Source of the DNA: Chrysemys picta bellii | Taxonomy: Eukaryota | Direction of reading: 5' to 3' | Assembly (NCBI RefSeq): GCF_011386835.1 | Contig: NC_088792.1 | Span: forward strand, 20,150,001 to 20,214,000 | DNA length: 64,000 bases | In this document: positions 6,020 through 59,663 of the stretch, one piece after another | Numbering within the stretch: position 1 is the stretch's first letter | How the letters are laid out: each line of letters begins with the position of its first letter | The notes under the pieces: generated by a model | What the model was told of the DNA's origin: nothing | Database searches by the model: none | Seen by the model: the letters and a program-made list of their open reading frames with translations, nothing else | Made by a program: the position numbers and the translations under genes

Positions 6020-7830
6020 ATGGGGGACAAATATTTAATAATGGGTTCTTCAGTCTAGAAGAAAAAAGTATAACACAATCCAATGGCTGGAAATTGAAGC
6101 TAAACAAATTCAAACTGGAAATAAGGTGTAAATTCTAATTAACCATTGGAACAGTTTACCAAAGGTCATGGTGGATTCTCCATCACCGACAATTTTTAAA
6201 TAAAGAGTGGATCTTTTTTTTTCTAAAAGATCTGTTCTAGCAATTTGGGGGGGGGGGGAGGGAGTTCTATGACCTGTATTATACAGCTCAGACTAGAAAA
6301 GGATCATAGTGGTCCCTTCTTTCTTATGAACCTATGAATTGCAGGATCAGGGCCTAAGTTTGTTAGAGGATTAATCTTTGTAGTGTACTGTGAAGACATG
6401 AAGTTCTATAACTGCGCTAAGTACTAGAGCTCAGACTGGCATAAATGATTTTACACTGAACATATTTCTGATTCAGAACAATTGCTTTAAATGCAAGACC
6501 AGGAGCAACAAAAGCAGTTTTTTTGTATAACAAAAAGCATCTTAATCCCCACAAACTGATGCACAGCACAGAGAAAATGCTTTTTAAACAGCATACAACA
6601 GCTAACCCATCAGATTTAATTTTTATATCCCAATCTGTGAAATTCATAAACATTTCAGGAACAATACATTCACTATACGAAAAGGGAATATTACCCCATT
6701 CAATTTAAAACAGTTTGTATACAACCATAGAATAATAAAAGTGTAGGACTGGAAGGGACCTCAGTAGATCATCTAGTCTAGTCCCCTACACTCAAGGCAG
6801 GACTATGTAAAAACTAGACTATTTGAGTGGTGTTTAATCTTAAAAACCTCCAGTGACAGAGATGCCACATTATCTCTGGGCAATTTGTTCCAGTGCCTAA
6901 CTACCCTGACAGTTGGGAAGCTTTCAGCCCATTGCTGCTTGTCCTACCCTCAGAAGTTAGGAACAATTTTTCTCCCTCCTTCTTGTAACAACTTTTTATG
7001 TACATGAAAACTACCAAGTTCCCCCTCAATCTTCTCTTCTCCAGACTAAATAAACCCAGGTTTTTTTTTTTCAATCTTTCCTCAGAGATCACCTTTTAAA
7101 ATCATTTTTGTTGCTTTCCTCTGGACTTTCTCCAATTTGTCCATACCTTTCCTGAAATGTGGCGCCCAGAACTGGACACAATACTTCAGCTGAGGCCTTA
7201 TCAGCGTGGAATGGAGTGGAAAGGAAGAATTATTTCTTGTGTCTTGCTTATAACACTCCTACTATTACATCCCGGAATTATGTTTGCTTTTTTTTTTTTT
7301 TTTTTTTTTGCAAGAGTGTTACACTATTGACTCAAATTTAGCTTGTGACCCACTATTAATCCCAGATCCTTTTCCGCAGTACTCCTTCCTAGGCAGTCAT
7401 TTCCCGTTTTGTATGTTTGCAATTGATTGTTCCTTCTTAAGTGGAGTACTCTGCATTTGTCCTTACTGAATTTCACTCTATTTACTTGAGACCATTTCTC
7501 TAGTTTGTCCAGATCATTTTGAATTATAATTCTAGCCTCCAAAGCATGTGCAACCCCTCCCATCTTGATATTGTCCACAAAATTTACAAGTGTACTCGCT
7601 GTGCCATTATCTGAATCATTGATGAAGATATTGAACAGAACTATAACCAGGACAGATTCCTGCAGGACTCCACTCAATATGCCCTTCTAGGTTGACTGTG
7701 AATCACTGATAACTAGTCTCTGGGAACAGTTTTCCCACCAGTTATGCACCCACCTTAGAGTAGCTCCATCTAGGCTTTATTTCCTAGTTTGTTTATGAGA
7801 AGGTCATGCGAGACATTATCAAAAGTCTTA

Positions 7831-8078
7831 GGCTGTCTACACTACAGCCTATGTCGGGAAAACGTATGTTGCTCAGGATGTGAATATTCCACCCCCCCTC
7901 AGAGACATAAGTTACACCGACATAAGCATTAGCGCTGTCCACACAACGTCGGCAAGAGAACTGCTCCCACCGACATAACTTACACCACTCATGGAGGTGA
8001 GGTTTTTTATGCTCACAGGAGAGCTCCCTCCCGTTGGTACAGCTGCGCTGCTGAAGCACTGTATGTATAGACATATCC
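7831..8078. mobile_element. PIF/Harbinger-type MITE
   Basis: GGCTGTCTACAC...TATAGACATATCC termini; TTA TSD; removing it restores the CR1 sequence. Confidence 0.8.
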
Positions 8079-8780
8079 TTACTAAAGTCACGTTATACCA
8101 CATCTACCGCTTCCCCCATCCACAAGGCTTGTTACCCTGTGAAAAAAGCTATTAAGTTGGTTTGACATGATTTATTCTTGACAAATCTATGTTGACTATT
8201 ACTTATCACCTAATTCTCTTCTAGGTGTTTGCAAACTGACTGCTTGATTATTTCCTCCATTATCTTTCTGGGTACTGAAGTTTAAGCTGATTGGTCTAAG
8301 TCCACAGGTTGTCCTTATTCCCCTTTTCATAGATTGGCACTACATTTGCCCTCTTCTGGTCCTCTGGAATCTTTCCCATTTTCCCTGAGTTTTCGAAGAT
8401 AATCACTAATGGCTCAGATACCTCCTCAGTCAGCTCCTTGAGTATTCTAGGATGCATTTCATCAGGCCTTGGTGACTTGAAGACATTTAGCTTGTCTAAG
8501 CAATTTATAGCTTGTTCTTTCCCTAATTTAGCCTCAGATCATATCTCATTTTCACTGTGGTTCACTATGTCAGACATCCGATTGCTGCTAACTTTTGGTA
8601 AAAACTGGAAACAAAAAGTTGTTTCGTAATTCTGCCATTTCCACATTTTCTGGTATTGCCTCCCCAACCCCTCCATCATTGAGTAATGGGCCTATCCTAT
8701 CCTTGGTCTTCCTCTTGCTTCTAATATATTTGTAGAATGTTTTCTTGTTACCCTTTGTCTCTAGCTAGTTTAGTCTCATT

Positions 8781-11974: not shown

Positions 11975-12426
11975 TAAAACTTGGGCAAAATACCAATATA
12001 AAAGAAAATAGAGTGTAAGAAATAAAAATAAAGTACAAAACATTTTCAATCTTCAAATCCATAACTTAAGAGACAGCAAGCCCTTTTTATTTTTATTTTC
12101 ACATCCAAATTTTCCTTTAGATTGAAGTACCATAGTTAAAATATTTAAAAACTAGCAAACTAATTAATTATGATATCTAAAACGGGATCTTTTAAAACGG
12201 TAGTATAATACAAAACATAGTAAATTATGTTTCCTCATAATAAAATTACACATCCTAAAAAAGATGCAGTTTTTTTTTTGCTTTCCTGCTTTGAACTGCT
12301 CATCATCCCAAGGAACACAGCTGGAAAACAGCACTCACAGGAAGTATTAGTTACTTTACACGGTGGCTGGAACAGCTAGATTTAATGCTCCAAGGACTCC
12401 GAAGCAATAAGGCATTTTACTATCCA

Positions 12427-12442
12427 TCAAGTAAATTTATAT
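12427..12442 (-). CDS. PAXIP1: PAXIP1 last coding exon (S)YKFT-stop
   Basis: cttAC|A TAT AAA TTT ACT TGA; corresponds to the vertebrate PTIP C-terminus YESYKFN as recalled. Confidence 0.92.
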
Positions 12443-13228
12443 GTAAGTTTGTTAAGGGAAAACAACTTTGAAAAATCAGTGCAGAAAAAATTTACATAAA
12501 AACATTAACTCAAAGAAGTATAATGCTTGCTTTTCTTAGGCGAATATTACGGATATCTACAGGGTTTACAATATTTTGGACTAACGAGCTATTTGCTACT
12601 TCTAGAAACCACTGACAGATAGAATTTATACTTTTGCTTAAAATGTTGCTATTGTTCAATCTACTTTGTGTGTTCAGAATAATCTTTTCTAGAATATACT
12701 TCAAACAAGCCAAAAAAGTTTAAGCGCCCCCCCCCCCAATCAATTACATCATATTTATGTAGTACCTTCTTTATCCATCTTTGATACATTATTGCAATCC
12801 AAAAATGTTTAGTTTCAGTAATCAGGATAAAATTTGTCATTTTAAAATTAATTATTCAGACCATTCCCCAACTCATCTACCCCATAGGGTTCTCTGCTTC
12901 AGGGGAATCTGAAGTAATCTGTCAAGTACTGGGAAAATAGCAAGTATGTTTTCCACAAATCCACCCAAGTCTGAAATTCAAGACAAAGCAGTCTGTGTCT
13001 AGATCGGTCCAACTGTGCAAAAAGGGAGGAGGATGAATATAACATAGAGGAGACTACACATGAGTGATTGGAAAAAAAGTCACCACATTCGTTCTACTTT
13101 AAATTGAACCTACGTCTCCAGAAACAACAGACTAACGTATTAACTTACCTTGTCTCCTAGTATATAAATACATTTAGTAAAACCTTTCCCAACAATCACA
13201 TTTCTTGGTTTTCATATAAAAAGGATAT
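12443..13228 (-). other. U12-type (minor spliceosome) AT-AC intron, last intron of PAXIP1, 786 nt
   Basis: 5' end ATATCCTTT; branch site TTCCCTTAAC at 12460-12451, about 10 nt upstream of terminal AC (12444-12443); splicing restores the frame to YKFT*. Confidence 0.93.
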
Positions 13229-13289
13229 GATTCATAATCCAGTGTTTGAGTAAGTACTCCAGTCAGAACAAACTCCGCATTATGGACAT
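13229..13289 (-). CDS. PAXIP1: PAXIP1 penultimate exon (D)[19 protein letters not shown](S)
   Basis: tttctAG|AT...GAATC|ATATCCTTTT (U12-type donor); 61 nt. Confidence 0.94.
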
Positions 13290-15368: not shown

Positions 15369-15444
15369 CTATGCCTCTGGCAAAATATTCTCGACATAAG
15401 TGAAGATCATTTTCACAGGATATCAAGATTATCGCTGACAAACT
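15369..15444 (-). CDS. PAXIP1: PAXIP1 exon [25 protein letters not shown]
   Basis: aatttAG|AGT...G|GTACGT; 76 nt; preceded by a 92-nt intron. Confidence 0.95.
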
Positions 15445-15536: not shown

Positions 15537-15671
15537 TTTGTTTTGTTTGTGTTCCATAAGTTTTCGAAAAGAAGGTTGTTTGGATAATACTTTTCCTCCT
15601 GCACATTCCACAATTGCCTTCATGGTGGAAAGGCTAGGACAAATTCCAGGTGTAATGTAAAAGTATTTCCC
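15537..15671 (-). CDS. PAXIP1: PAXIP1 exon [49 protein letters not shown]6
   Basis: tttttAG|GGG...AAA|GTGAGT; 135 nt. Confidence 0.96.
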
Positions 15672-24480: not shown

Positions 24481-27400
24481 TAAGTAACCTCCATTTATAC
24501 TGTATAATGTTTATCTGTAACTGGAGGTTCTTCTAGAAGTGTGGTCCCTATCTGTATTCCACACATGGGTATGCATACACACCATGCGCCTGAGTCTGGA
24601 GATTTTCACTAAGCAGAGTACATTGTTCTGCACATGCACAGTTCTCCTCATGCTCTGAACCTAGGGTATATATGGGAGGCGGTGCAGACTGGCGCCTCTC
24701 CAGTTCCTTCTCCTACCACAAATCCAGTTATGATCTACAGCAGAGGGGATGGAGGAGAGGTAGTGGAATACAGCTAGGAACCGCACATCTCAAAGAGACT
24801 TTAGTTACAGGAAAGTACGCTCCTTTTCTTCTTCCAGTGATAGTTCCTATGTGTATTCCACATGTGGGAGATTAGCAAGCAGTAGTCAAACAGAAGATGG
24901 GTGCAAGGATGCAGAAATGATGGCTGACTGTAATACTTCTGTCCTCATAGTTGCATCTGTAGTAGAAGACTGGACCAAAGCGTAATGTTTTGTGAAGGTG
25001 TGAAAGGCACTCCAGATAGCTGCCCTATATCTCTCTGGTAGAAATGCAGTAGTCTAGTCTCACGTACATGCAGTAGAGGTTGCTTGTACTCTGGGGGAAT
25101 GGGCCCTCACCCTCTCTGGGGCAGGGATGTGAGCTAGCTGGTAACAAAGGATAATGCAATCAGAGATCCATTTAGAAAGTCTCTGTGCAGATGTAGCTTG
25201 ACCACTCAATCTCTCTGCTATAGTAAACAAAAAGTCTAGGTGTCTTTCTAATCACCGTTTTTCTTTGCAGATCAATGCCTGTGCTCTTAGGATGTACAGA
25301 GATTGAAGCTTTCTCTCTCCTCATCAGAGGCATGCAGTTTTGGGGAAAAGTATCCGTAAGTTGGATGATTTGATTCATGTGAAACTCTGGAATTATTTTG
25401 GTGATGCATTTTAGGTGGGGCCAAAGAGAGACCTTTTCTTTATAGAAGGCAGTATATGGTGGATCTGCCATCATTGCTCCCAGCTCGCTGACTCTCTTGG
25501 CTGATGTGATGGTGCCTAGGAAGGCAACTTTCATTGACAGATGGGACATAGAACATGTGGCTAAAGGTTCAAAAGAAGGTTTGGAGAGAGAAGAAAGAAT
25601 GAGGTTGAGGTCCCAATGAAGAACTGGCTTCACCAGCAGTGGGAAGGATCTAAGAAGTCCTTTCAGGAATTTAGTCATCATGGGAGGAGGGAAGATAATG
25701 TTAGACAATAGGACAACCACACTATCTGGATATCCTGGGACCAGATGATTGGGAGGAAAGCATTGCCCGCAGGTGGATTGCTCTTAGTTCCAGTAAATGG
25801 ATAGACACCCTGGACTCCCCCAGGGGTTCAGATGCCTTATGCAGTATGTTTGTCCATATGAGCTCCCCAAACTAAGAGCGAGGCATCAATAGCAATCGTT
25901 GCGTCAGTTGTAGGTGTGAGCAAAGGAGTCCCCACTCAAACTTTCTCCAGCTTCGTCCACCAGACGAGAAAGGCCAGAAACTTGGACGGAACAGTTATTC
26001 TGGCATTGAGATGGACTTTTTCTGGTGAGAAGATGGACTGATTTTGCAGGCAACAAAGATGAAGCCTGGCAAATGGTGTCATATGTGTGCATGAGGCCAT
26101 GTGACCAAAAAGGGAAAGGCAAGTTCTGACTGAAGTCAGAGAATGACCTGTTTTATGAGCTCTTCCATTGCATGGAATATCTTGGTAAGTAAATAGGCTC
26201 TCGCTGTAGTTATGTCCAAGGTCGCTCCCATGAAATCTATGGACCTTGTGGTGGTCAAAGTGCACTTTTCTTGGGTGACACAAATTCCCAAGGAAGATAG
26301 TAAATGGAGCAGGAATTGGGTAGCCAACTGGACTTCCTTTATGATCTGTCTGTAGCAGGGTGGTCACCCCGCTCATGACCTGAAGGGCTTAAAACAGCCC
26401 TGGGAGAGGGCTGGGGTGGGGGAAAAGCTAGGCTGATTAGGGGAAAGCAGCCACAGGTGGGGCTACGCCCCAATCAGGCCATGGCTGGCCCTATAAGAGG
26501 GCTGAGGGCCAGAGACTGGAAGACACTCTCTCTCTAGCTTTTTGAGACAGAAGGACCTGGCTGCCTGGGAGCTGAGAAGGATACCTAGGGTGGAGCAGTG
26601 CTGGGGAAGGGCAGTGGGAGATGGGGAACTCCATCCTAGAAAAACCCCAGGCTGCAGGCCTTGGTAAAGGGCCTACAAAAGGCAGCCCAGAGATAGGCAA
26701 AGGCAGCAGATCCTAACCCCCATGCTGATGACAAGTGGTTTACAGACTGCAGTCTGCCCCAGTGAGCAGGGGCTAGATGATAACTGGCAGTAGCCACTGA
26801 GGCAAGGTAGGGATAGAGGGTTGGGGGTTCCCCTGGGCGGGGAGACCCAGAGAAAGTGGGTTGCTGCTGGGGGCAGAACCCTGAAGTAGAGGGACACCCC
26901 GGGGCCAGTGGCGTGCAAGTTACCGGCCTGCAGAAGGCGCTCTGGGTTGGAAAGAGCTAATTCCTGAGATGACCAGCAGGAGGCGCTGCACCAGTGAGTC
27001 ACTGCCCCGCCACACTGTCATAAGCCAGTTGTTAAGTTACAGGAAGATGGAAAACCAACTTCTTCTTATCCAGGCTGCCACCACTGAAAAGACTTTTGCA
27101 AAGACCTGGGGTTCCGTAGCTAGGCCAAACTGGGCTCTGCATTGGTAATTGTCTTCACCAAAGAGGAACCTTCTGTGGGATGGGTAAATGTCTGTATGAA
27201 AGAATGTCTGTGTGAAAATCAAAATTCAGCATGGTCACACTGGCATCAATAATTCCCTCCATTGAAGAAGGCAAACTATTTAACAAACAGTTTGCCCTCT
27301 TACAGAGAGAGAATTATTGATGCCAGTGTGACCATGCAGAATTTTAATTTTTTGGATGAATAATATATTTAGTTGGCCTAGGTCGAGAATCAGACTCCAT

Positions 27401-49954: not shown

Positions 49955-50870
49955 CTGGTAAAGCATTAAAACCAAATTTTTAATTAAAATGTTTGTTAAT
50001 CTAACTAGCCCCCAGTTTCAAATGGAGTCATCTGCTTAACAGACAATGTTAGGGGAGTGTTTTTACACCTTAAGTGCTGGCCTCAGTTAAAAAACAAACA
50101 ATGGCATACTTGCAAGAAGCAAGTAAGTTTTGCAAACAAAGCCAAGTTCTTTCATACATCAATATGACAAGTGTGTTCTCTTGCTTATTCATCTTTAAAA
50201 ACGCATCCATTCATAATGATTTAAAAATGCATTACTTGGGAACAGCTTCTCTTTGTATGAGTTTAAAAAAAGACAGTGTTACCTGTTCCGTAACTGGTGT
50301 TCTTCGAGATGCGTTGCTCATGTCCATTCCATAATAGGTGTGTGTGCTTGCCACATGCACTGGTGCCGGAAGTTTTTCTCTCAGTGATATCCATACGGGA
50401 CTGGCTCTGGCACCCTCTGGAGTGGCGCGCACATGCCATGGTATAAGGGGCACTGCCGGCTCCCCCCACACTCAATTCCTTCTTGCCAGAATCTCCGACA
50501 GTGGGGAAGGAGGGCGGGTCATGGAATTGGACATGAGCAACACATCTCGAAGAACACCAGTTACAGAACAGGTAACTGTCTTTTCTTCTTTGAGTGCTTG
50601 CTCATGTCCGTTACATATTAGGTGACTCCCAAGCAGTACCAGAGGCAGGTAGGAGTTCACAGACGCGTAGATTGCAACACAGCTCTGCCGAACCCAGCGT
50701 CATCTATGGCCTGCTGAGTGCGCCATGAATGTGTGAATTGAAGACCACATTGTGGCTCTGCAAATGTCCTGGATGGGAATATGCGCCAGGAAGGCCGCCA
50801 AGGACGCCTGGTCTCTGGTCGAATGGGCCCTCATGATTGGTGGCGGTGGGACTTGTGCCAGCTCATAACA

Positions 50871-51217
50871 CAGTGGTGGGCTACCGGCAACCTACGGGCC
50901 GCACGCAGCTCATCAGGGTAATCCGTTGGCGGGCCACGAGACAGTTTATTTACATTGACTATCCAAAGGCACGGCCACCCGCAGTTCCCAGTGGCCGCAT
51001 TTCAACGTTCCTGGCCAATGGGAGCTGCGGGAAGAGGCGCGGGCTGGCCGCCGTTTCCTGCAGCTCCCATTGGCCAGAAACAGCGAACCGCAGCCACTGG
51101 GAACTGCGGGTGGCCGTGCCTGCGGACGGTCAATGTAAATAAACTGTCTCGCAGTCCGACAGCAGATTACCCTGACGAGCCACGTGCGGCCCGTGGGCCG
51201 CAGGTTGCTCACTACTG
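50871..51217 (+). mobile_element. Palindromic hAT (Charlie/Buster-type) MITE, 347 bp, in the YR ORF of DIRS E
   Basis: CAGTGGTG...CTACTG termini; exact 8-bp TSD TCATAACA (50863-70 / 51218-25); arms are inverted over ~150 bp. Confidence 0.9.
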
Positions 51218-51870
51218 TCATAACAGCTCCGGATGCAGGAGATGATCCAGTTGGAAATCCTCTGGGAGGGCACCGAAAGGCCCTTCTTCCTGTCCGCTGT
51301 CGCGATGAAGAGCTGGGTTGACCTGCGGAAGGGCTTGGTACACTCCAAGTACAACACCCAGGCACGTCTGACTTCCAGGGCTTGCACCCTCCTTTCCTCA
51401 CTACTGGGGCGCGGCTTGGGACAAAACACCAGGAAGAAGATCTCCTAGATGACATGGAAGGAAGACTCCACTTTCGGCAGAAAGGCTGGATGGGGTCACA
51501 GTTGAACTTTGTCCTTGTAAAACACCATACATGGCAGCTCCGATGTCAGGGCTTTAATCTCTGACACTCGTCTCGCTGATGTTATTGCTACAAGGAAAGC
51601 GACTTTCCATGACAGGTGGGAAAGGGAGCAGGAGCCCATAGGCTCAAAGAGCAGACCCATGAGCCTAGAAAGAACCAAGTTAAGGTCCCACTGTGGCAGA
51701 GGAGCCGAAACCGGCGGGAAGAGCCTCTCAGGAATCTGATTGACATGTCATGCGAGAACACCATCTGACCTTGGATCGGTGGGTGGAAAGCGGAGATGGC
51801 CACATGGTGCACCGTGATGGAAAGAGGCTAGTCCCTGGTTCTTAAAATGAAGCAGGTAATCTAAGATAGA

Positions 51871-52637
51871 TTATAAGGAGGAGCATGACAAAGAGATGTT
51901 ACGCTTAGACACCCAATAGGAGAACCTCGTCCACTTCGCCAGGTAGGTTGCTCTGGTGAAAGGCTTCTTGCTTTCCAGGAGGACTTGCTGGACCTCATCA
52001 GAGCAGGCCCGCTCTTCTGGGTTCAACCATGCAGCATCCAAGCCGTGAAGTGGAGGGAGGCGAGGTTGCGGTGGAGGAGGTGCCCGTGATCTTGGAAGGG
52101 GCCAGGGAGTGGTCGCCGCTGGGTTCATCAGTGTGCTGAACCAATGTTGGCACAGCCACACTGGGGTGATCATCATGACTTGGGCCTTGTCTCTCTTTAT
52201 ATTTGACAAGACTCTGCTGATGAGTGTCATTGGGAATGCGTATATCAGACCCCCTGACCATGACAGGAGGAAGGCATCGGAGAGAGAGCCCTTGCCCAGA
52301 CCCTGGAGGGAACAGAATTGATGACATTTTCTGTTCTGTCTTGCGGCAAACAGGTCCACTTGGGGAGTTCGCCACCTCTGGAAGAGCATTTGGGCTACCT
52401 CCGGATGCAGCGACCATTCGTGGTGAGAGAAAAAAAGACCTGCTGAGGCGATCTGGTCATGCCGGGGAGGTGGCAGGCCTCCAGGTGCATCACGTGCTTG
52501 ATGCAGAAATCCCACAATTGGAGAAGCCTCTTGACAGAGTGCTGACGAGCGTGCTCCCCCTTGTCTGTTGATGTAAAACATAGAGGCCGTATTGTGCGTC
52601 ACCACTCTCACCACATTGCCTGACAGATGCGGTAGAA
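51871..52637 (-). pseudogene. DIRS copy E RNase H C-terminal part and methyltransferase-like (MT) domain
   Basis: VTHNTASMFYINRQGGARS (RNase H); PQVDLFAARQNRKC and LIYAFP (DIRS MT motifs). Confidence 0.78.
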
Positions 52638-52964
52638 CAGGGGTCGGCAACGTTTGGCAAGCGGCTCACCAGGGTAAGCACCCTAGCGGGCCGGGCCAGT
52701 TTATTTACCTGCTGACGCGGCAGGTTCGGCCGATCGCGGCCCCCACTGCCGCGGTTCGCCGTCCCGGGCCAATGGGGGCGGCGGGAAGCTGCGGACAGCA
52801 CATCCCTCGCCGCTTCCCGCCGCCCCCATTGGGCCGGGACGGCGAACCGCGGCCAGTGGGGGCCGCGATCGGCCGAACCTGCCGCGTCAGCAAGTAAATA
52901 AACTGGCCCGGCCCGCTAGGGTGCTTACCCTGGCGAGCCGCGTGCCAAACGTTGACGACCCCTG
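52638..52964 (+). mobile_element. Near-perfect palindromic hAT MITE, 327 bp, in the RNase H of DIRS E
   Basis: CAGGGGTCGGCAAC...GTTGACGACCCCTG; TSD CGGTAGAA/CGGCAGAA; removing it rejoins VFLP|HLSGNVV. Confidence 0.92.
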
Positions 52965-53113
52965 CGGCAGAAAGACCCTGCAGGCCAAACGTACCACTCT
53001 GAGCTCCATGACGTTTATATGCAACATCATCTCCTCCAGGGACCACGTCCCTTGGGTCTGTAGCTCGCCTAGATGCAACTCCCCAGCTGATGTCCGAAGC
53101 GTCCGATATCAGT

Positions 53114-54217
53114 TCAACTGAGTGGTGTGGGCTGTCGAACGGAACTCCTTCCAGGACAGCCTTGGGATCGGTCCACTATTGCAGGGAGGTAAGTAATGGT
53201 CTTGTCCAGGTGATCTTTGGGCTGGAAATAGACAGTTGCCAGCCACTGCTGCCAGGGTCGCATTCTGAGCCTTACATGGCGGATGACATACATACATGCT
53301 GCCATGTGGCCCAGCAGATGCAGACATACCCGGGACGTGGTTAGAGGGAATGCAGAGACCCCTGCGATGAGGTCCATCATCGTCTGGAACCTCTCCTGCA
53401 GCAGGAAAGCTCTGGTGCAGGTGGAGTCGAGCACCGCTCCCATGAACTCTATCCTTTGCATCGGAACTAACGTTGACTTCTTGTCATTCACCAACAGGCA
53501 CAGGGACCAGCACATGACCTGTAGCACCGTGATTTCCCTTTGGACTTGAGACCTGGAGCGGCCTTTGACCAGCCAGTCGTCGAGATACGGGTATATTTGA
53601 ATACCCCGATGCCTGAGGTAAACTGCTATCACCGACATGCACTGGGTAAACACCCTCTGTGCTGTCACTAGGCCAAAAGGGAGACCCGCAAACAGGTAGT
53701 GGTCCGATCCCACTGTGAAGCACAGGAAGCTTCTGAGTCCTTGGAAAATTGCTATATGAAAGTACACATCCAAGTTGAGGGCAACACACCAGTCTCCTGG
53801 ATCCAGGGAGGGGATGATGGGGGCCAGGGAGACCATGCGGAACTTTAACTTCTTTAGGTATTTGTTGAGGTCTCGCAGGTCCAGGATGGATCTTAGACCA
53901 CCTTTGGCCTTTGGGATTAGAAAGTACGTGGAATAGAACCCCTTGTTCCTGTACTCGCGAGGAACTTCCACTGCTACCTTCATCTCCTGTGTGAGGAGAC
54001 TTTTGTGAGAAGGGTCCCTGAAGAGGAACAGGAAAGGAGAGTGGGAGGGGAGGTAGAAAGAAACTGGAGGGAATAGCCCTGGGCCACTGAGTTGAGGATC
54101 CAGCGGTCCGAAGTTATCGTGGTCCATGCAGGGAGAAAAAAAGAAAGACGCTTTGAGAAACATAGGGAGGATGGAGCCGGGTACAGTCTGGTTGGTCGCC
54201 CTCAGCTGCACCCTCAA
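53114..54217 (-). pseudogene. DIRS copy E reverse transcriptase ORF (367 aa)
   Basis: GFYSTYFLIPKAKGGLRSILDLR, LPFGL, YPYLDDWLV. Small deletions and downstream frameshifts make it non-functional. Confidence 0.9.
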
Positions 54218-57200
54218 AACGCCTGCTAGCCACCCTGCTTATTGCGGGAGGCGCCCGATTGGGTAGAGGGTGGAGGTTGGTGGCTCTGGCGACGTTTGTA
54301 GCCTTTGCTGATCTCCTGCCTGGGTTGGCTCCCTTGACCCTGGGGCTATTGCAGCTTGAACTGCCTACGGGCCAGACCAGGGATGTAGAGCCCTACGGTT
54401 TTCAATCTAGTACAGGAGTCCTTCAACCCGTTTAATTTATTGTCTGTTTGCTCATCAAACAGCACTTGGCTATCAAAGGGAAGGTCCTGTATCGATGGCT
54501 GGGCCTCTGTCGACAAGCCCGAGAGAAGGAGCCAGGACACCCTCTGCATGGAGATGGCTCAGGCCATGGTGCATGCCGCAGAGTCTGCCGCGTCTGAGGC
54601 TGCTTGCAGGGCTGCTTTGACTGCAGCCTTGCCCTCATCGAGGATCACCCAGAACTCCTTCCTGGTGTCCTCGGGAAGCGAATCCTCAAACTTGGCCATG
54701 GCTTGCCACATATTGAAGCCATAGCAGCCAAAGAGGGCTTGGTTGGTGGCCACCCTCAACTGGAGGATGAATAAATTTTGTGTCCGAACAAATCCAGCCT
54801 CTTTGAGTCTTTATTCTTAGGAGAAGCTCTTGGTTGGCCTTGTCTCTCCCACTCATTAACAGTCACTACTACTAGGGAGCTTGGGGCCAGGTGGGTATAT
54901 AAGGACTTATGACCCTCAGCCAGCACAAAGTACTTTCTTTCTGCCCTCTTGGAGATGGGGGGCAGGAATGAGGGTGTATGCCACAGGGCGTTTGTGATCT
55001 TAGACAACTCTTCATGGAGGGGCCGAGCCTGGCCGGTGTTGTTGATCAGAGGACATTGAATAGGGAGTCCAACGGTTCCTCCAGCTCCTCTGCCTGGAGC
55101 CCCAAGTTAGAGGCAACTCTTTTCAACAGTTCCTGATGAGCCTTAGCATCATCCTGAGGAACTGGGTGAGGGGCCCCCAAAATTGCCTCATCAGGCGAAA
55201 ATGAGGAAGAAGCTGCTGCCATGGGTTCTGACACGTCCATTGGTGGTCCAGTTGGCTGATCCCCGTGGTCCGCATGAGCCTGAGGGGTTCCTGTTTCAGG
55301 AACGGCTGGCTCTGGGGGAGGGCGGGATACTGAGGCCGATGGTTTGTCCAAGGCCCCTGCCACTGCCCTGAGCCCTTGTGATGGCTGGGTAAGCCCTGTG
55401 GGTTACATGGGTACCAGGCAGCTGGCCACTGGCCCTGGGGCAGTTGACGGTACCGCCGACATCAAGGGGACCACCGGTGCCGGGTTTTGGCACACTAGCA
55501 ACGATTCCTGTCCAGTGCCGGAGCTCAAGGCCAAGCGGTTGCTCTTAGGTGACCATGAGCAAGTAGATTGGCACTGCAGCGACCAGGATCGCCAATCACT
55601 GTGCTTGGAAGGGGAACTCTCCACTCGGGACGAGTCCCTTCCGCGGGTCCTTGGAGACCGACAGTGTTTGGCGGATTGGCGACGGCGTTTCAGCGATCTA
55701 CACCTCATGCTGCTCAACCAGTACCGGGATCTGGAGTGGGAATGAGAGCTGCAGTGGGTCAGTCTCTGGGAAGACCTTCCTCCCGACCTAGGGGATCCGT
55801 GTTGGGATAACACGTACCAGCGAGCCGACAACTGGTGACTCTGCTCCTGAGACCAACTGTCTTGGGCCCGCAACCAGTGACAAGCCATGGGTGAAGCAAT
55901 GGGCCGGGTCTTGGTGCTACTGATGCTGGGAAGGGCGGACTTCTATAGGCCTGTGCCAGGTCACTGGCGAGGTGCGCCTTGAGTCCTGCAGGCGGTGCCG
56001 TGAGTCCGGACACTGGTGAGGGCTTCGCCAAGCCTGCCTCTCTGCCTTCAATGCCTGGTGGCTCCGCGTGGGCAAGCGCTGGTGGGACATCCCCCACGAT
56101 GGGGAGCAGTGCCGCTGAGATGGTGACCTGTAGAAAGGACCCAAGGTGGGTTTACCCTCAGACCGGGGTACCGCCGTAGCCGGTGTGGACGGCACCGGTA
56201 GCACCAGGATATCCTGCACTGCCTGCGGGGCCTCGGGCATCGACCGGACCTCTAACTGACGAAGGCCCTCGTCATTGTCCAGCGTGGCAGGCATGGGTTG
56301 GGTGGGCTGGACTGCTCAACCTGAGCTGGGGCCCGACTCCCGGTAGGAGGTATCGAGCTGCCCTCCTCGGGCCTTGGCTCCCCTCCTACCTGAACCTTCC
56401 TATTGCGGGATGTAGGAGATCTTCCTCTCCTGGTCTTCTTTTGCCGTTTGGCAGATGCTGGGGAGGGGGATCGATGGCGTCAGTGGGGCTCTCCGCACTG
56501 ATGCTGTGGTGCTCGGGGCAGAGTCGGACCTCGACTGCTCCAGTGTCGGAGTTAAAGCTGACTCCATTAAGGAGCACTTTGAGACGGAGGTCTCTCTTCT
56601 TCTTAGTCCGAGGTTTGAAGGACTTGCAGATACGGCTCTTGTCACTGATATGCAATTCGCTGAGACACCTTAAACAACTATTATGCGGATCGCTGATGGG
56701 CATCCATTTCTTGCAGCAAACGCAGGGCCTAAAGCCTGAGGACCGAACCTAGACTAAGCCCCATTTGGGACCAACCAAATAAATCACTCTAACCCTAACA
56801 CAGTAAGGGAAACTGAACTATGTACAACTATTTTACAAGAAAAGTTTGAAACACTGAACAAAGTGAAAAAAGCTAGCTGAAGCAGCAGACGTTACAGAAC
56901 AGTCACTGGTGCCAAGAAGGAACTGAGGGTGCAGGGAAGCCGGCGGCGTCCCTTGTATCGCAGCATGTGTGCACCGCTCCAGAGGGTGCCAGAGCCGGTC
57001 CCCTACAGATACCACTGAGGGAAAAACTTCCAGCACCGGTGCATGCGGCGATTACACACAGCTAATATGGAATGAACATGAACAAGCACTCGAAGAACTA
57101 TTAGTATTTGAATGAAGGGGAAGAAACAGACTGTAGTTTACACTTTTTCGCTGAACCATGAAAGATGCATTCTCATCTTTAGAAATATTAGAAAAACAAA

Positions 57201-58211: not shown

Positions 58212-58930
58212 CTAGAACAGTTTGCAGATGAAAGAATAGAAAATTGTAAACTAAAGCAGTTTGGAGGCTACCATTTCAGACCACATTTGTTATATTCAAA
58301 TTTCCCACTATCAGCTATGGAATAAATGAATTTTGAATTTTCTTTCTTTTTAAGGAATTTAATGCTCAAAGGTTCTAGAATTGGACACCCTGGGCACTGA
58401 AGTCCTGCTTCTCTAGAATACAGCTCAAGAAGTGTTTCCCCCCAGTGTGAAATGAAAACTAGGTCAACCAAGAATTATATGCTATTCATTTCATATAAAC
58501 CACCACCAGTGAGATGGAAAAAACTTCCCAGCTGATACCAGGATGGGCAGGAGCTGAAACAGAAATCTAGATGTGAATGGTAACGGAATATCAATTTCTC
58601 TCATGACCCATCTAGTTTCCCAGCCTTTGGAATATTCTTCCCCAACCTCTCTCTTTTTGAAAATTTCCCTCTCTACCTCAAAAAGTAAAGTTGTGTTTTG
58701 CTTTATATGTACAGTACACATAGACTAACACAATATATGCATTTAGATGGTAGTGGCGAAAAACACAAACCAGAAAATAGGAAGATCTCAATGCTTTCAC
58801 CTTCCATCAAGTACTGGATAGTCCCTAGTTTATAGTATATTCTATTTTTGATCAAGAACAAATTTTAACCCAACAAACATTTCATATGATTGACCATCAC
58901 TTTCAGGATTATAAATCAATCATTACTAAC

Positions 58931-59427
58931 TCTCTATGGCTGGATCATGTCCAAACAGCTGATGTTGTTGCAGCTGTGGCTGCTGGTGATGTTGCAGTTG
59001 CTGGGCTGGCACCTGATGTTGTAGCGGCTGAGATGTTTGAGTCAAATGTTGCGGCGCTTGAGTTTGCATTTGCTGCTGTTGATGTTGCTGATGTAATCGC
59101 TGTAAATGCTGCTGTTGCAACTGCTGTTGCTGAATTTGCTGCTGTTGCTGCTGTAGTTGTTGCTGTTGAAGGTTCTGCTGCTGTATTTGCTGTAATTGTT
59201 GCTGCTGCAACTGTTGTTGTTGTAACTGATGCAACTGCTGTTGCAAGGCATGCTGCTGTTGGAATTGCAGCTGTTGCTGAGGCCGGTGGAGTTGTTGTTG
59301 AGGATGTAGTTGTTGCTGTGGAAACTGTAGCTGCTGTGCAAACTGGTGTTGCTGATGAACTTGCTGTTGCTGTTGTGAAAACTGATGAGACTGTTGCTGT
59401 GGGAAAGGTTGTTGAGGAATCTGTGGT

Positions 59428-59459
<32 letters not shown>

Positions 59460-59663
59460 CAACTGCATAAGTTGTTGAGGTTGAAGGTGTAAAAGAGGGT
59501 GGTGCTGTTGCTGCTGTGTTTGATGTTGTTGTTGTTGTTGTAATAAATGTGTCTCTGGAGTTAATTTCACTTGGCTAAACAACACAGCGTTTGTATGTCC
59601 CTGTTGGCTATGATTTACTTGTTGTTCTAAACTTTTTGTAGGTGCTGAAAGGGATTGCAAGAT
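58931..59663 (-). CDS. PAXIP1: PAXIP1 polyQ exon ([23 protein letters not shown]...[12 protein letters not shown])
   Basis: Acceptor ttttctAG|ATC at 59664-5; donor A|GTTAGT at 58930; 733 nt; matches ORF 58926..59660. Confidence 0.96.

What the first reader, a model, noticed from the sequence alone, without database searches (positions are those of the whole stretch)
12443..13228. PAXIP1 terminal intron is a minor-spliceosome AT-AC intron
It has a canonical U12 donor ATATCCTT, a branch site TTCCCTTAAC about 10 nt from AC, and no polypyrimidine tract. It is needed to attach the last residues (YKFT*) of the phosphopeptide-binding BRCT5-6 module. Both the intron and the next exon start with ATAT, so aligners can slide the junction up to 4 nt and misannotate it. 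PTIP output may therefore depend on U11/U12/U4atac/U6atac. I could not check whether this intron is already catalogued.
Basis: partly seen in the sequence, partly recalled or inferred. Interest (0 to 1): 0.7.

Follow-up and report, generated by a model that had tools for sequence, protein, structure and literature searches.

The report
Known U12 intron ending turtle PAXIP1
The last intron of the turtle PAXIP1 (PTIP) gene is a textbook minor-spliceosome AT-AC intron, but the same intron is already catalogued in human and mouse and already shown to depend on a minor-spliceosome factor in human cells, so it is real but ordinary.

Summary
On the minus strand a 786-base intron (13228..12443) starts ATATCCTTT. 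It carries CCCTTAAC 9-10 nt before a terminal AC, with no room for a pyrimidine tract. It joins ...LDYE-S to YKFT-stop. The flanking exons are 100% identical to the solved human PTIP BRCT5-6 module (PDB 3SQD), which ends one residue after ...ESYKF.

The donor octamer alone is not above chance. The composite donor + branch site + AC signature, however, occurs only once in the window, exactly here. No GT, GC or AG lies where a U2 intron would need it. The junction can slide -1 to +4 nt, and only offset 0 gives AT-AC.

It is also listed as a U12 A-type AT-AC intron by de Wolf 2021. There its retention in HeLa cells rises from PSI 0.25 to 0.81 after CENATAC depletion, and it also rises in patient cells.

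The scan has noted other U12 introns in this genome (TPC3, PROX), but not this one on other DNA.

Verdict: genuine, conserved, already known.

The parts
15537..15671 (-). PAXIP1 BRCT6 coding exon (45 codons, GKYFYITPG...HKQNK), ordinary AG/GT borders
   Evidence: Sequence read. 100% identical to 3sqd_A residues 126-168, E 4.5e-25.
15369..15444 (-). Next coding exon (76 nt, [25 protein letters not shown] plus G), AG/GT borders
   Evidence: Read by eye only.
13229..13289 (-). Penultimate exon (61 nt): completes the D codon, then [19 protein letters not shown], then TC of the Ser codon. The 3' splice site upstream of it is an ordinary U2-type tttctag.
   Evidence: Matches 3sqd_A residues 196-216 of 219 at 100%.
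12443..13228 (-). Terminal intron, 786 nt, AT-AC, phase 2 (inside the Ser codon)
   Evidence: No Rfam family. No AATAAA or ATTAAA inside it.
13220..13228 (-). U12-type 5' splice site ATATCCTTT
   Evidence: With the exon's last three bases it gives the same 12-mer as mouse Paxip1 in MIDB Table S2, 5'SS score 95.9.
12451..12460 (-). U12-type branch site TTCCCTTAAC; the candidate branch adenosines at 12453/12452 are 10 or 9 nt from the intron's last base
12443..12444 (-). 3' terminal AC
12427..12442 (-). Coding start of the last exon: A completes the Ser codon, then TAT AAA TTT ACT TGA (YKFT-stop). The 3' UTR follows, with AATAAA/ATTAAA hexamers starting at 12386, 12097, 12091 and 11974.
   Evidence: The human chain reads ...ESYKF plus one residue.
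13174..13176 (-). Stop codon (TAA) reached if the intron is retained. The C-terminus would then read ...[19 protein letters not shown].
13143..13150 (-). U2-consensus donor AG|GTAAGT inside the intron, 26 nt after the read-through stop

Best explanation
This is the last intron of the turtle PAXIP1 (PTIP) gene. It is a genuine U12-type (minor-spliceosome) AT-AC intron, orthologous in position and phase to the catalogued terminal minor intron of human and mouse PAXIP1.

Inferred mechanism, from established knowledge of U12 splicing:
- The U11 snRNP, and later U6atac, pair with ATATCCTTT.
- The U12 snRNA pairs with CCCTTAAC and bulges a branch adenosine 9-10 nt from the AC.
- There is no pyrimidine tract and no involvement of U2AF.

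Splicing joins GAA TC to A TAT AAA TTT ACT TGA and closes the BRCT5-6 module with ...LDYESYKFT.

If the intron is not removed, translation runs 16 further codons into it, to a stop at 13176-13174. Because this is the last intron, that stop would not be followed by an exon junction.

Shown here: the sequence signals, the gene identity, the C-terminus, and the lack of any U2 alternative. Shown in the literature for the human ortholog: the U12 classification and the rise in retention when a minor-spliceosome factor is removed. Inferred: that the turtle intron is spliced the same way.
For: - Signals at the stated coordinates.
- The composite signature is unique in the window.
- There is no GT or GC within 12 nt of the donor. 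There is no AG between 12466 and 12422.
- The exons are 100% identical to PTIP BRCT5-6, PDB 3SQD, and that chain ends where the spliced model ends.
- MIDB Table S1 lists the orthologous intron in human and mouse. The mouse 5' splice-site 12-mer is identical to the turtle's.
- de Wolf 2021, Dataset EV1, sheet 'U12 A-type', has human PAXIP1 as AT_AC with donor score 0.948 and branch score 0.878. The exon flanks are the same as in the turtle (...TATGAATC before the intron, ATATAA after it).
- In that dataset PSI goes from 0.25 to 0.63 to 0.81 after 24 and 48 h of CENATAC depletion (padj 2.4e-25). In patient cells it goes from 0.35 to 0.58 (padj 6.6e-10).
- The same paper reports that none of 85 major-type AT-AC introns responded.
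Against: - No turtle transcript was seen.
- The branch-to-3' splice-site distance of 9-10 nt is slightly below the 11-13 nt optimum quoted in Olthof 2019.
- In ZRSR2-mutant MDS samples the rise in retention of the human intron is only borderline (PSI 0.24 to 0.33, padj 0.054).
- No formal PWM or intronIC score was computed for the turtle sequence.
Confidence: 0.93

Rival explanations
1. It is an AT-AC intron removed by the major (U2-dependent) spliceosome, like the divergent AT-AC subclass described by Wu & Krainer and by Dietrich et al. in 1997.
For: Terminal dinucleotides alone do not tell the two classes apart, as Olthof 2019 notes.
Against: The 5' splice site is ATATCCTTT, the U12 consensus. 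A U12 branch consensus lies 9-10 nt from the AC, with no pyrimidine tract. The human ortholog is scored as U12 and responds to CENATAC depletion, whereas none of 85 major AT-AC introns did.
Confidence: 0.02
2. The motifs are a coincidence and the turtle transcript ends differently. It might read through to ...[19 protein letters not shown], or it might use another last exon.
For: RTATCCTT is not enriched in the window. No turtle RNA evidence was obtained.
Against: The composite signature is unique in 64 kb and sits exactly at the break in homology. From the frequencies I estimate a joint chance of about 1e-8 to 1e-7. The spliced model reproduces ...ESYKF plus one residue, as in the human protein. 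The intron position, phase and both exon flanks match the human intron.
Confidence: 0.03
3. Retention of this terminal intron is a used, regulated output. It would give an mRNA that escapes nonsense-mediated decay and a PTIP with a different tail, not just a splicing failure.
For: Basal retention of the human ortholog is high: PSI 0.24-0.35 in controls. The read-through stop lies in what would be the last exon. There is no poly(A) hexamer inside the intron.
Against: Beyond Y-P-F, which the U12 donor consensus itself dictates, the read-through peptide differs between the turtle and the human donor flank printed. The tail is therefore not conserved. Retained U12 introns are usually nuclear-detained or degraded (general knowledge, not tested here). 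Spliced human mRNA fell after CENATAC depletion (log2 fold change -1.2 at 48 h).
Confidence: 0.05

Closest known systems
Human PAXIP1 terminal intron chr7:154944165-154946364 (MIDB, Olthof 2019; de Wolf 2021 Dataset EV1, U12 A-type AT-AC)
   Same: Same gene, same codon position and phase, and the same exon flanks (...TATGAATC before the intron, ATATAA after it). Same ATATCCTTT donor, AT-AC ends and spacing from branch site to AC.
   Different: The turtle intron is 786 nt, against 2200 nt in human. The turtle branch site, CCCTTAAC, is closer to the consensus than the human TTCCTCAAC. The last residue is T in the turtle; the last human residue was not shown by the tools.
Mouse Paxip1 terminal intron chr5:27742504-27744114 (MIDB)
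   Same: Identical 5' splice-site 12-mer ATCATATCCTTT, MIDB score 95.9.
   Different: The mouse branch site, TTTTCCTCAATG, scores only 66.7. The mouse intron is 1611 nt.
U2-type AT-AC introns (Wu & Krainer 1997; Dietrich et al. 1997)
   Same: AT-AC terminal dinucleotides.
   Different: Those introns have U2-like 5' splice-site and branch sequences. This one has the U12 donor and branch consensus.

Membership tests
U12-type (minor-spliceosome) intron, AT-AC (A-type) subclass | 5' splice site matching /RTATCCTT | tested here: met
   ATATCCTTT at 13228-13220 on the minus strand. The 12-mer equals the mouse Paxip1 entry in MIDB.
U12-type (minor-spliceosome) intron, AT-AC (A-type) subclass | Branch-site consensus TCCTTRAY close to the 3' splice site (optimum 11-13 nt) | tested here: met
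   CCCTTAAC at 12458-12451 matches 7 of 8 consensus positions. The branch adenosine is 9-10 nt from the 3' end. This is slightly under the quoted optimum, but the spacing is the same as in the human ortholog.
U12-type (minor-spliceosome) intron, AT-AC (A-type) subclass | No polypyrimidine tract between the branch site and the 3' splice site | tested here: met
   Only AAACTTAC lies between them.
U12-type (minor-spliceosome) intron, AT-AC (A-type) subclass | AT-AC terminal dinucleotides at the only junction offset that reproduces the mRNA with a known pair | tested here: met
   Offsets -1 to +4 were enumerated and only offset 0 gives AT-AC.
U12-type (minor-spliceosome) intron, AT-AC (A-type) subclass | The spliced junction is seen in RNA of this organism | tested here: inconclusive
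The runs found are kept as contigs and none is on record as RNA.
U12-type (minor-spliceosome) intron, AT-AC (A-type) subclass | Removal depends on minor-spliceosome components | not testable with these tools
   Shown for the human ortholog only: CENATAC depletion takes PSI from 0.25 to 0.81, patient cells go from 0.35 to 0.58, and ZRSR2-mutant MDS is borderline.
PAXIP1 / PTIP, C-terminal BRCT5-6 module | Sequence identity to the solved PTIP BRCT5-6 domain, and the same C-terminal end point | tested here: met
   Two exons match 3sqd_A at 100% (residues 126-168 and 196-216 of 219). The chain continues K-F plus one residue.

The most novel reading that the evidence does not exclude
The ATAT/ATAT repeat at this junction, conserved from turtle to human, may make aligners place the junction 3-4 nt off. 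Published minor-intron tables would then mis-score PAXIP1.

In Olthof 2019 this intron shows 100% 'cryptic' 5' and 3' splice-site use together (CAT6 and CAT7, MSI = 1) in human and mouse, and retention MSI = 1 in mouse. IntEREst, by contrast, gives PSI of about 0.25 in human controls.

If this is an artefact, part of the reported coincident CAT6+CAT7 'cryptic splicing' of minor introns would be an alignment artefact and not biology.
Probability: 0.35. Interest if true: 0.3.

Novelty: already known. Interest (0 to 1): 0.1.

Why it matters
This ties PTIP, a DNA-damage and MLL3/4-complex adaptor, to minor-spliceosome activity. That link is already in public catalogues and data sets for human and mouse. 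The turtle copy adds only that the intron, its phase, its donor and its branch-to-AC spacing are shared by turtle, human and mouse, with a branch site nearer the consensus in the turtle. The practical value is for annotation. The junction must be placed at offset 0 (AT-AC), and junction counts for this intron should be normalised for the -1 to +4 nt ambiguity.

Tried and rejected
- Full-text searches for PAXIP1 with 'minor intron', 'U12' or minor-spliceosome terms found no paper that discusses it in its main text. The evidence is in supplementary tables only.
- The supplements of PMC7507305, PMC11347168 and PMC6800510 are not held as text. I therefore could not check whether the 263-species version of MIDB lists the turtle intron.
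- The second minus-strand GTATCCTT, at 26584-26577, was looked at. It sits in non-coding, repeat-like sequence and is taken as chance. The second (5') PAXIP1 minor intron known in mammals has no donor match in this window.
- An Rfam scan of the whole window found nothing, so the intron hosts no known RNA gene.
Exons were searched one at a time by reference.
- The large protein searches and a cross-species intron alignment were not run. They were not needed for the identity, and the tools do not reach other vertebrate genomes without a full-length protein.
- No PWM was built from the published tables, because that would have meant retyping long lists.

Full report
**1. The observation**

PAXIP1 lies on the minus strand of the window. 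Reading that strand, the penultimate coding exon runs 13289..13229. It is preceded by an ordinary tttctag acceptor. It encodes (D)[19 protein letters not shown] and ends with TC.

- The next bases, 13228-13220, are ATATCCTTT.
- 786 bases further on the intron ends ...GTTGTTTTCCCTTAACAAACTTAC, with the final C at 12443.
- The last exon then starts A TAT AAA TTT ACT TGA. The A completes a Ser codon, YKFT follows, and the stop is at 12429-12427.
- The branch-site decamer TTCCCTTAAC is at 12460-12451. Its two adenosines are 10 and 9 nt from the last intron base.
- Only AAACTTAC lies between the branch site and the exon, so there is no pyrimidine tract.

**2. Is it more than chance?**

The donor octamer alone is not. 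RTATCCTT occurs 4 times on both strands, against 4.8 expected from shuffles. Near-matches to TCCTTAAC are, if anything, fewer than expected.

What is informative is the combination and where it sits:
- The pattern ATATCCTT followed within 5 kb by CCTTRAC, 4-14 bases and AC occurs once in the whole window on either strand, at exactly 13228/12457/12443.
- It sits exactly where identity to human PTIP breaks off in genomic read-through and where it must resume.
- From the observed motif frequencies I put the joint chance at about 1e-8 to 1e-7. This is my rough estimate.
- There is no GT or GC within 12 nt of the donor, and no AG between 12466 and 12422. No U2-type GT-AG intron could produce the conserved C-terminus.

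**3. Gene identity and the C-terminus**

I searched the exons one at a time, by reference.
- Exon 15671..15537 (45 codons) is 100% identical to residues 126-168 of PDB 3sqd_A, 'PAX-interacting protein 1', E 4.5e-25.
- The penultimate exon, plus the two read-through codons, matches residues 196-216 of that 219-residue chain at 100%.
- A longer read-through query shows that the human chain continues K-F and then has one last residue. The spliced turtle model...ESYKFT-stop, ends at the same point.

The exon at 15444..15369 was read by eye only.

**4. Junction ambiguity**

The intron and the last exon both begin with ATAT. The terminal pairs are CA-TA, AT-AC, TA-CA, AT-AT, TC-TA and CC-AT. Only offset 0 gives a recognised pair together with a donor that matches the U12 consensus.

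**5. What is already known**

- Olthof et al. 2019 (BMC Genomics, PMC6717393), Table S1, holds the MIDB coordinates. It lists two minor introns in PAXIP1 in each species.
  - Human: chr7:154944165-154946364 (2200 nt) and chr7:154991070-154993725.
  - Mouse: chr5:27742504-27744114 (1611 nt) and chr5:27781486-27783729.
  - Both genes are on the minus strand, so the lower-coordinate intron is the 3'-most of the two.
- Table S2 gives the mouse Paxip1 5' splice site as ATCATATCCTTT (score 95.9) and the branch site as TTTTCCTCAATG (66.7). That 12-mer is identical to the turtle's.
- De Wolf et al. 2021 (EMBO J, PMC8280824), Dataset EV1, sheet 'U12 A-type', lists human PAXIP1 chr7:154944165-154946364 as AT_AC. 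Its donor score is 0.948, its branch score 0.878 and its branch sequence TTCCTCAAC. The printed flanks end ...TATGAATC before the intron and begin ATATAA after it.
- These are the same exon flanks, the same phase and the same branch-to-AC spacing as in the turtle. Orthology of the intron is therefore secure.

**6. Dependence on the minor spliceosome**

This is already measured for the human intron.

| Data set (de Wolf 2021) | Retention, control or healthy sibling | Retention, test | Adjusted p |
|---|---|---|---|
| EV1, HeLa, CENATAC depleted 24 h | PSI 0.25 | PSI 0.63 | 4.7e-10 |
| EV1, HeLa, CENATAC depleted 48 h | PSI 0.25 | PSI 0.81 | 2.4e-25 |
| EV3, CENATAC-mutant patient lymphoblasts | PSI 0.35 | PSI 0.58 | 6.6e-10 |
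| EV2, ZRSR2-mutant MDS samples | PSI 0.24 | PSI 0.33 | 0.054 |

- In EV1 the spliced mRNA is estimated to fall by log2 -1.2 at 48 h.
- The same paper reports that 92% of A-type minor introns responded to CENATAC depletion and that none of 85 major-type AT-AC introns did.
- This argues against the U2-type AT-AC rival for this intron.

**7. Mechanism**

From established knowledge of U12 splicing (inference for the turtle):
- U11, and later U6atac, pair with ATATCCTTT.
- U12 pairs with CCCTTAAC and bulges a branch adenosine.
- The AC, 9-10 nt downstream, is the 3' splice site.

If the intron stays in, translation continues ...[19 protein letters not shown] to a TAA at 13176-13174.
- This is the last intron and it holds no AATAAA or ATTAAA. 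A retained transcript would therefore end at the normal 3' UTR signals (hexamers starting at 12386, 12097, 12091 and 11974) and would have no exon junction after its stop.
- Beyond Y-P-F, which the donor consensus itself encodes, the read-through peptide differs from the one implied by the human donor flank. I therefore see no sign of a conserved alternative tail.
- A consensus U2 donor, AG|GTAAGT, sits at 13150-13143, after that stop.

**8. What I could not do**

- No turtle RNA evidence was obtained.
- No formal PWM or intronIC score was computed.
- The multi-species MIDB could not be consulted.
- That the genome is a painted turtle comes from earlier notes of this scan, not from my own test.

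**9. A side observation on published data**

In Olthof 2019 Table S7 the PAXIP1 terminal intron has MSI = 1 for both CAT6 (a cryptic 5' site) and CAT7 (a cryptic 3' site). This holds in nearly all tissues of both species. Table S5 gives retention MSI = 1 in mouse tissues.

- Their reads were aligned with Hisat2. A site counted as cryptic only if it lay more than 2 nt from the annotated one.
- The authors remark that CAT6 often coincides with CAT7.
- I read CAT6 as a cryptic donor inside the intron and CAT7 as a cryptic acceptor inside the downstream exon, by contrast with how the paper defines CAT5 and CAT8. On that reading, a junction slid 3-4 nt to the right would give exactly this pattern.
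- It would also leave no 'canonical' junction reads, which would explain retention MSI = 1 where IntEREst finds PSI of about 0.25 in human controls.
- In human there is also a CAT9 call. An antisense transcript, PAXIP1-AS2, has an intron (chr7:154944621-154946359) that ends 5 nt inside the U12 donor. Either could confound unstranded data.

**10. Verdict**

The feature is a conserved, already catalogued and already functionally probed minor intron. It is a correct annotation point for the turtle genome, not a discovery.

Noticed in passing
Literature: Olthof 2019 (PMC6717393) Tables S5 and S7, orthologous human and mouse intron: The PAXIP1 terminal minor intron is scored MSI = 1 for cryptic 5' and cryptic 3' splice-site use together (CAT6 and CAT7) in human and mouse, and MSI = 1 for retention in mouse. 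De Wolf 2021 finds PSI of about 0.25 for the human intron. The pattern fits an aligner sliding the ATAT/ATAT junction by more than 2 nt, but human antisense PAXIP1-AS2 and a CAT9 call may confound it.
   Followed up: partly
window 13220-13228, + strand: The reverse complement of the U12 donor reads AAAG|GATAT. In human, the antisense transcript PAXIP1-AS2 has a GT-AG intron ending 5 nt inside the PAXIP1 U12 donor (de Wolf 2021 Dataset EV3), so it uses that AG as its acceptor. I did not examine whether the turtle has an antisense transcript here.
   Followed up: no
window 13143-13176, - strand: The read-through stop TAA is at 13176-13174. A consensus U2 donor AG|GTAAGT follows at 13150-13143, 26 nt later. 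This is the subject of the sister note s1-314160. The read-through tail is not conserved with human beyond Y-P-F.
   Followed up: partly
window 26577-26584, - strand: A second minus-strand GTATCCTT in the PAXIP1 gene body. It sits in GC-rich, repeat-like non-coding sequence with no coding exon before it, so it is probably chance. The known 5' PAXIP1 minor intron of mammals has no donor match in this window.
   Followed up: partly
window 58929-59663, - strand: A long open frame very rich in glutamine (runs of Q), which I take from general knowledge of PTIP to be its central Q-rich exon. It shows that the window covers the gene from its middle to its 3' end.
   Followed up: no
window about 50000-56800 and 7000-8600, - strand: Long open frames that look like retroelement remnants (reverse-transcriptase-like and DIRS-like), lying in a PAXIP1 intron and downstream of the gene.
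   Followed up: no
window 12727-12737: A run of about ten C on the + strand (G on the gene strand) in the middle of the U12 intron. No function is suggested.
   Followed up: no
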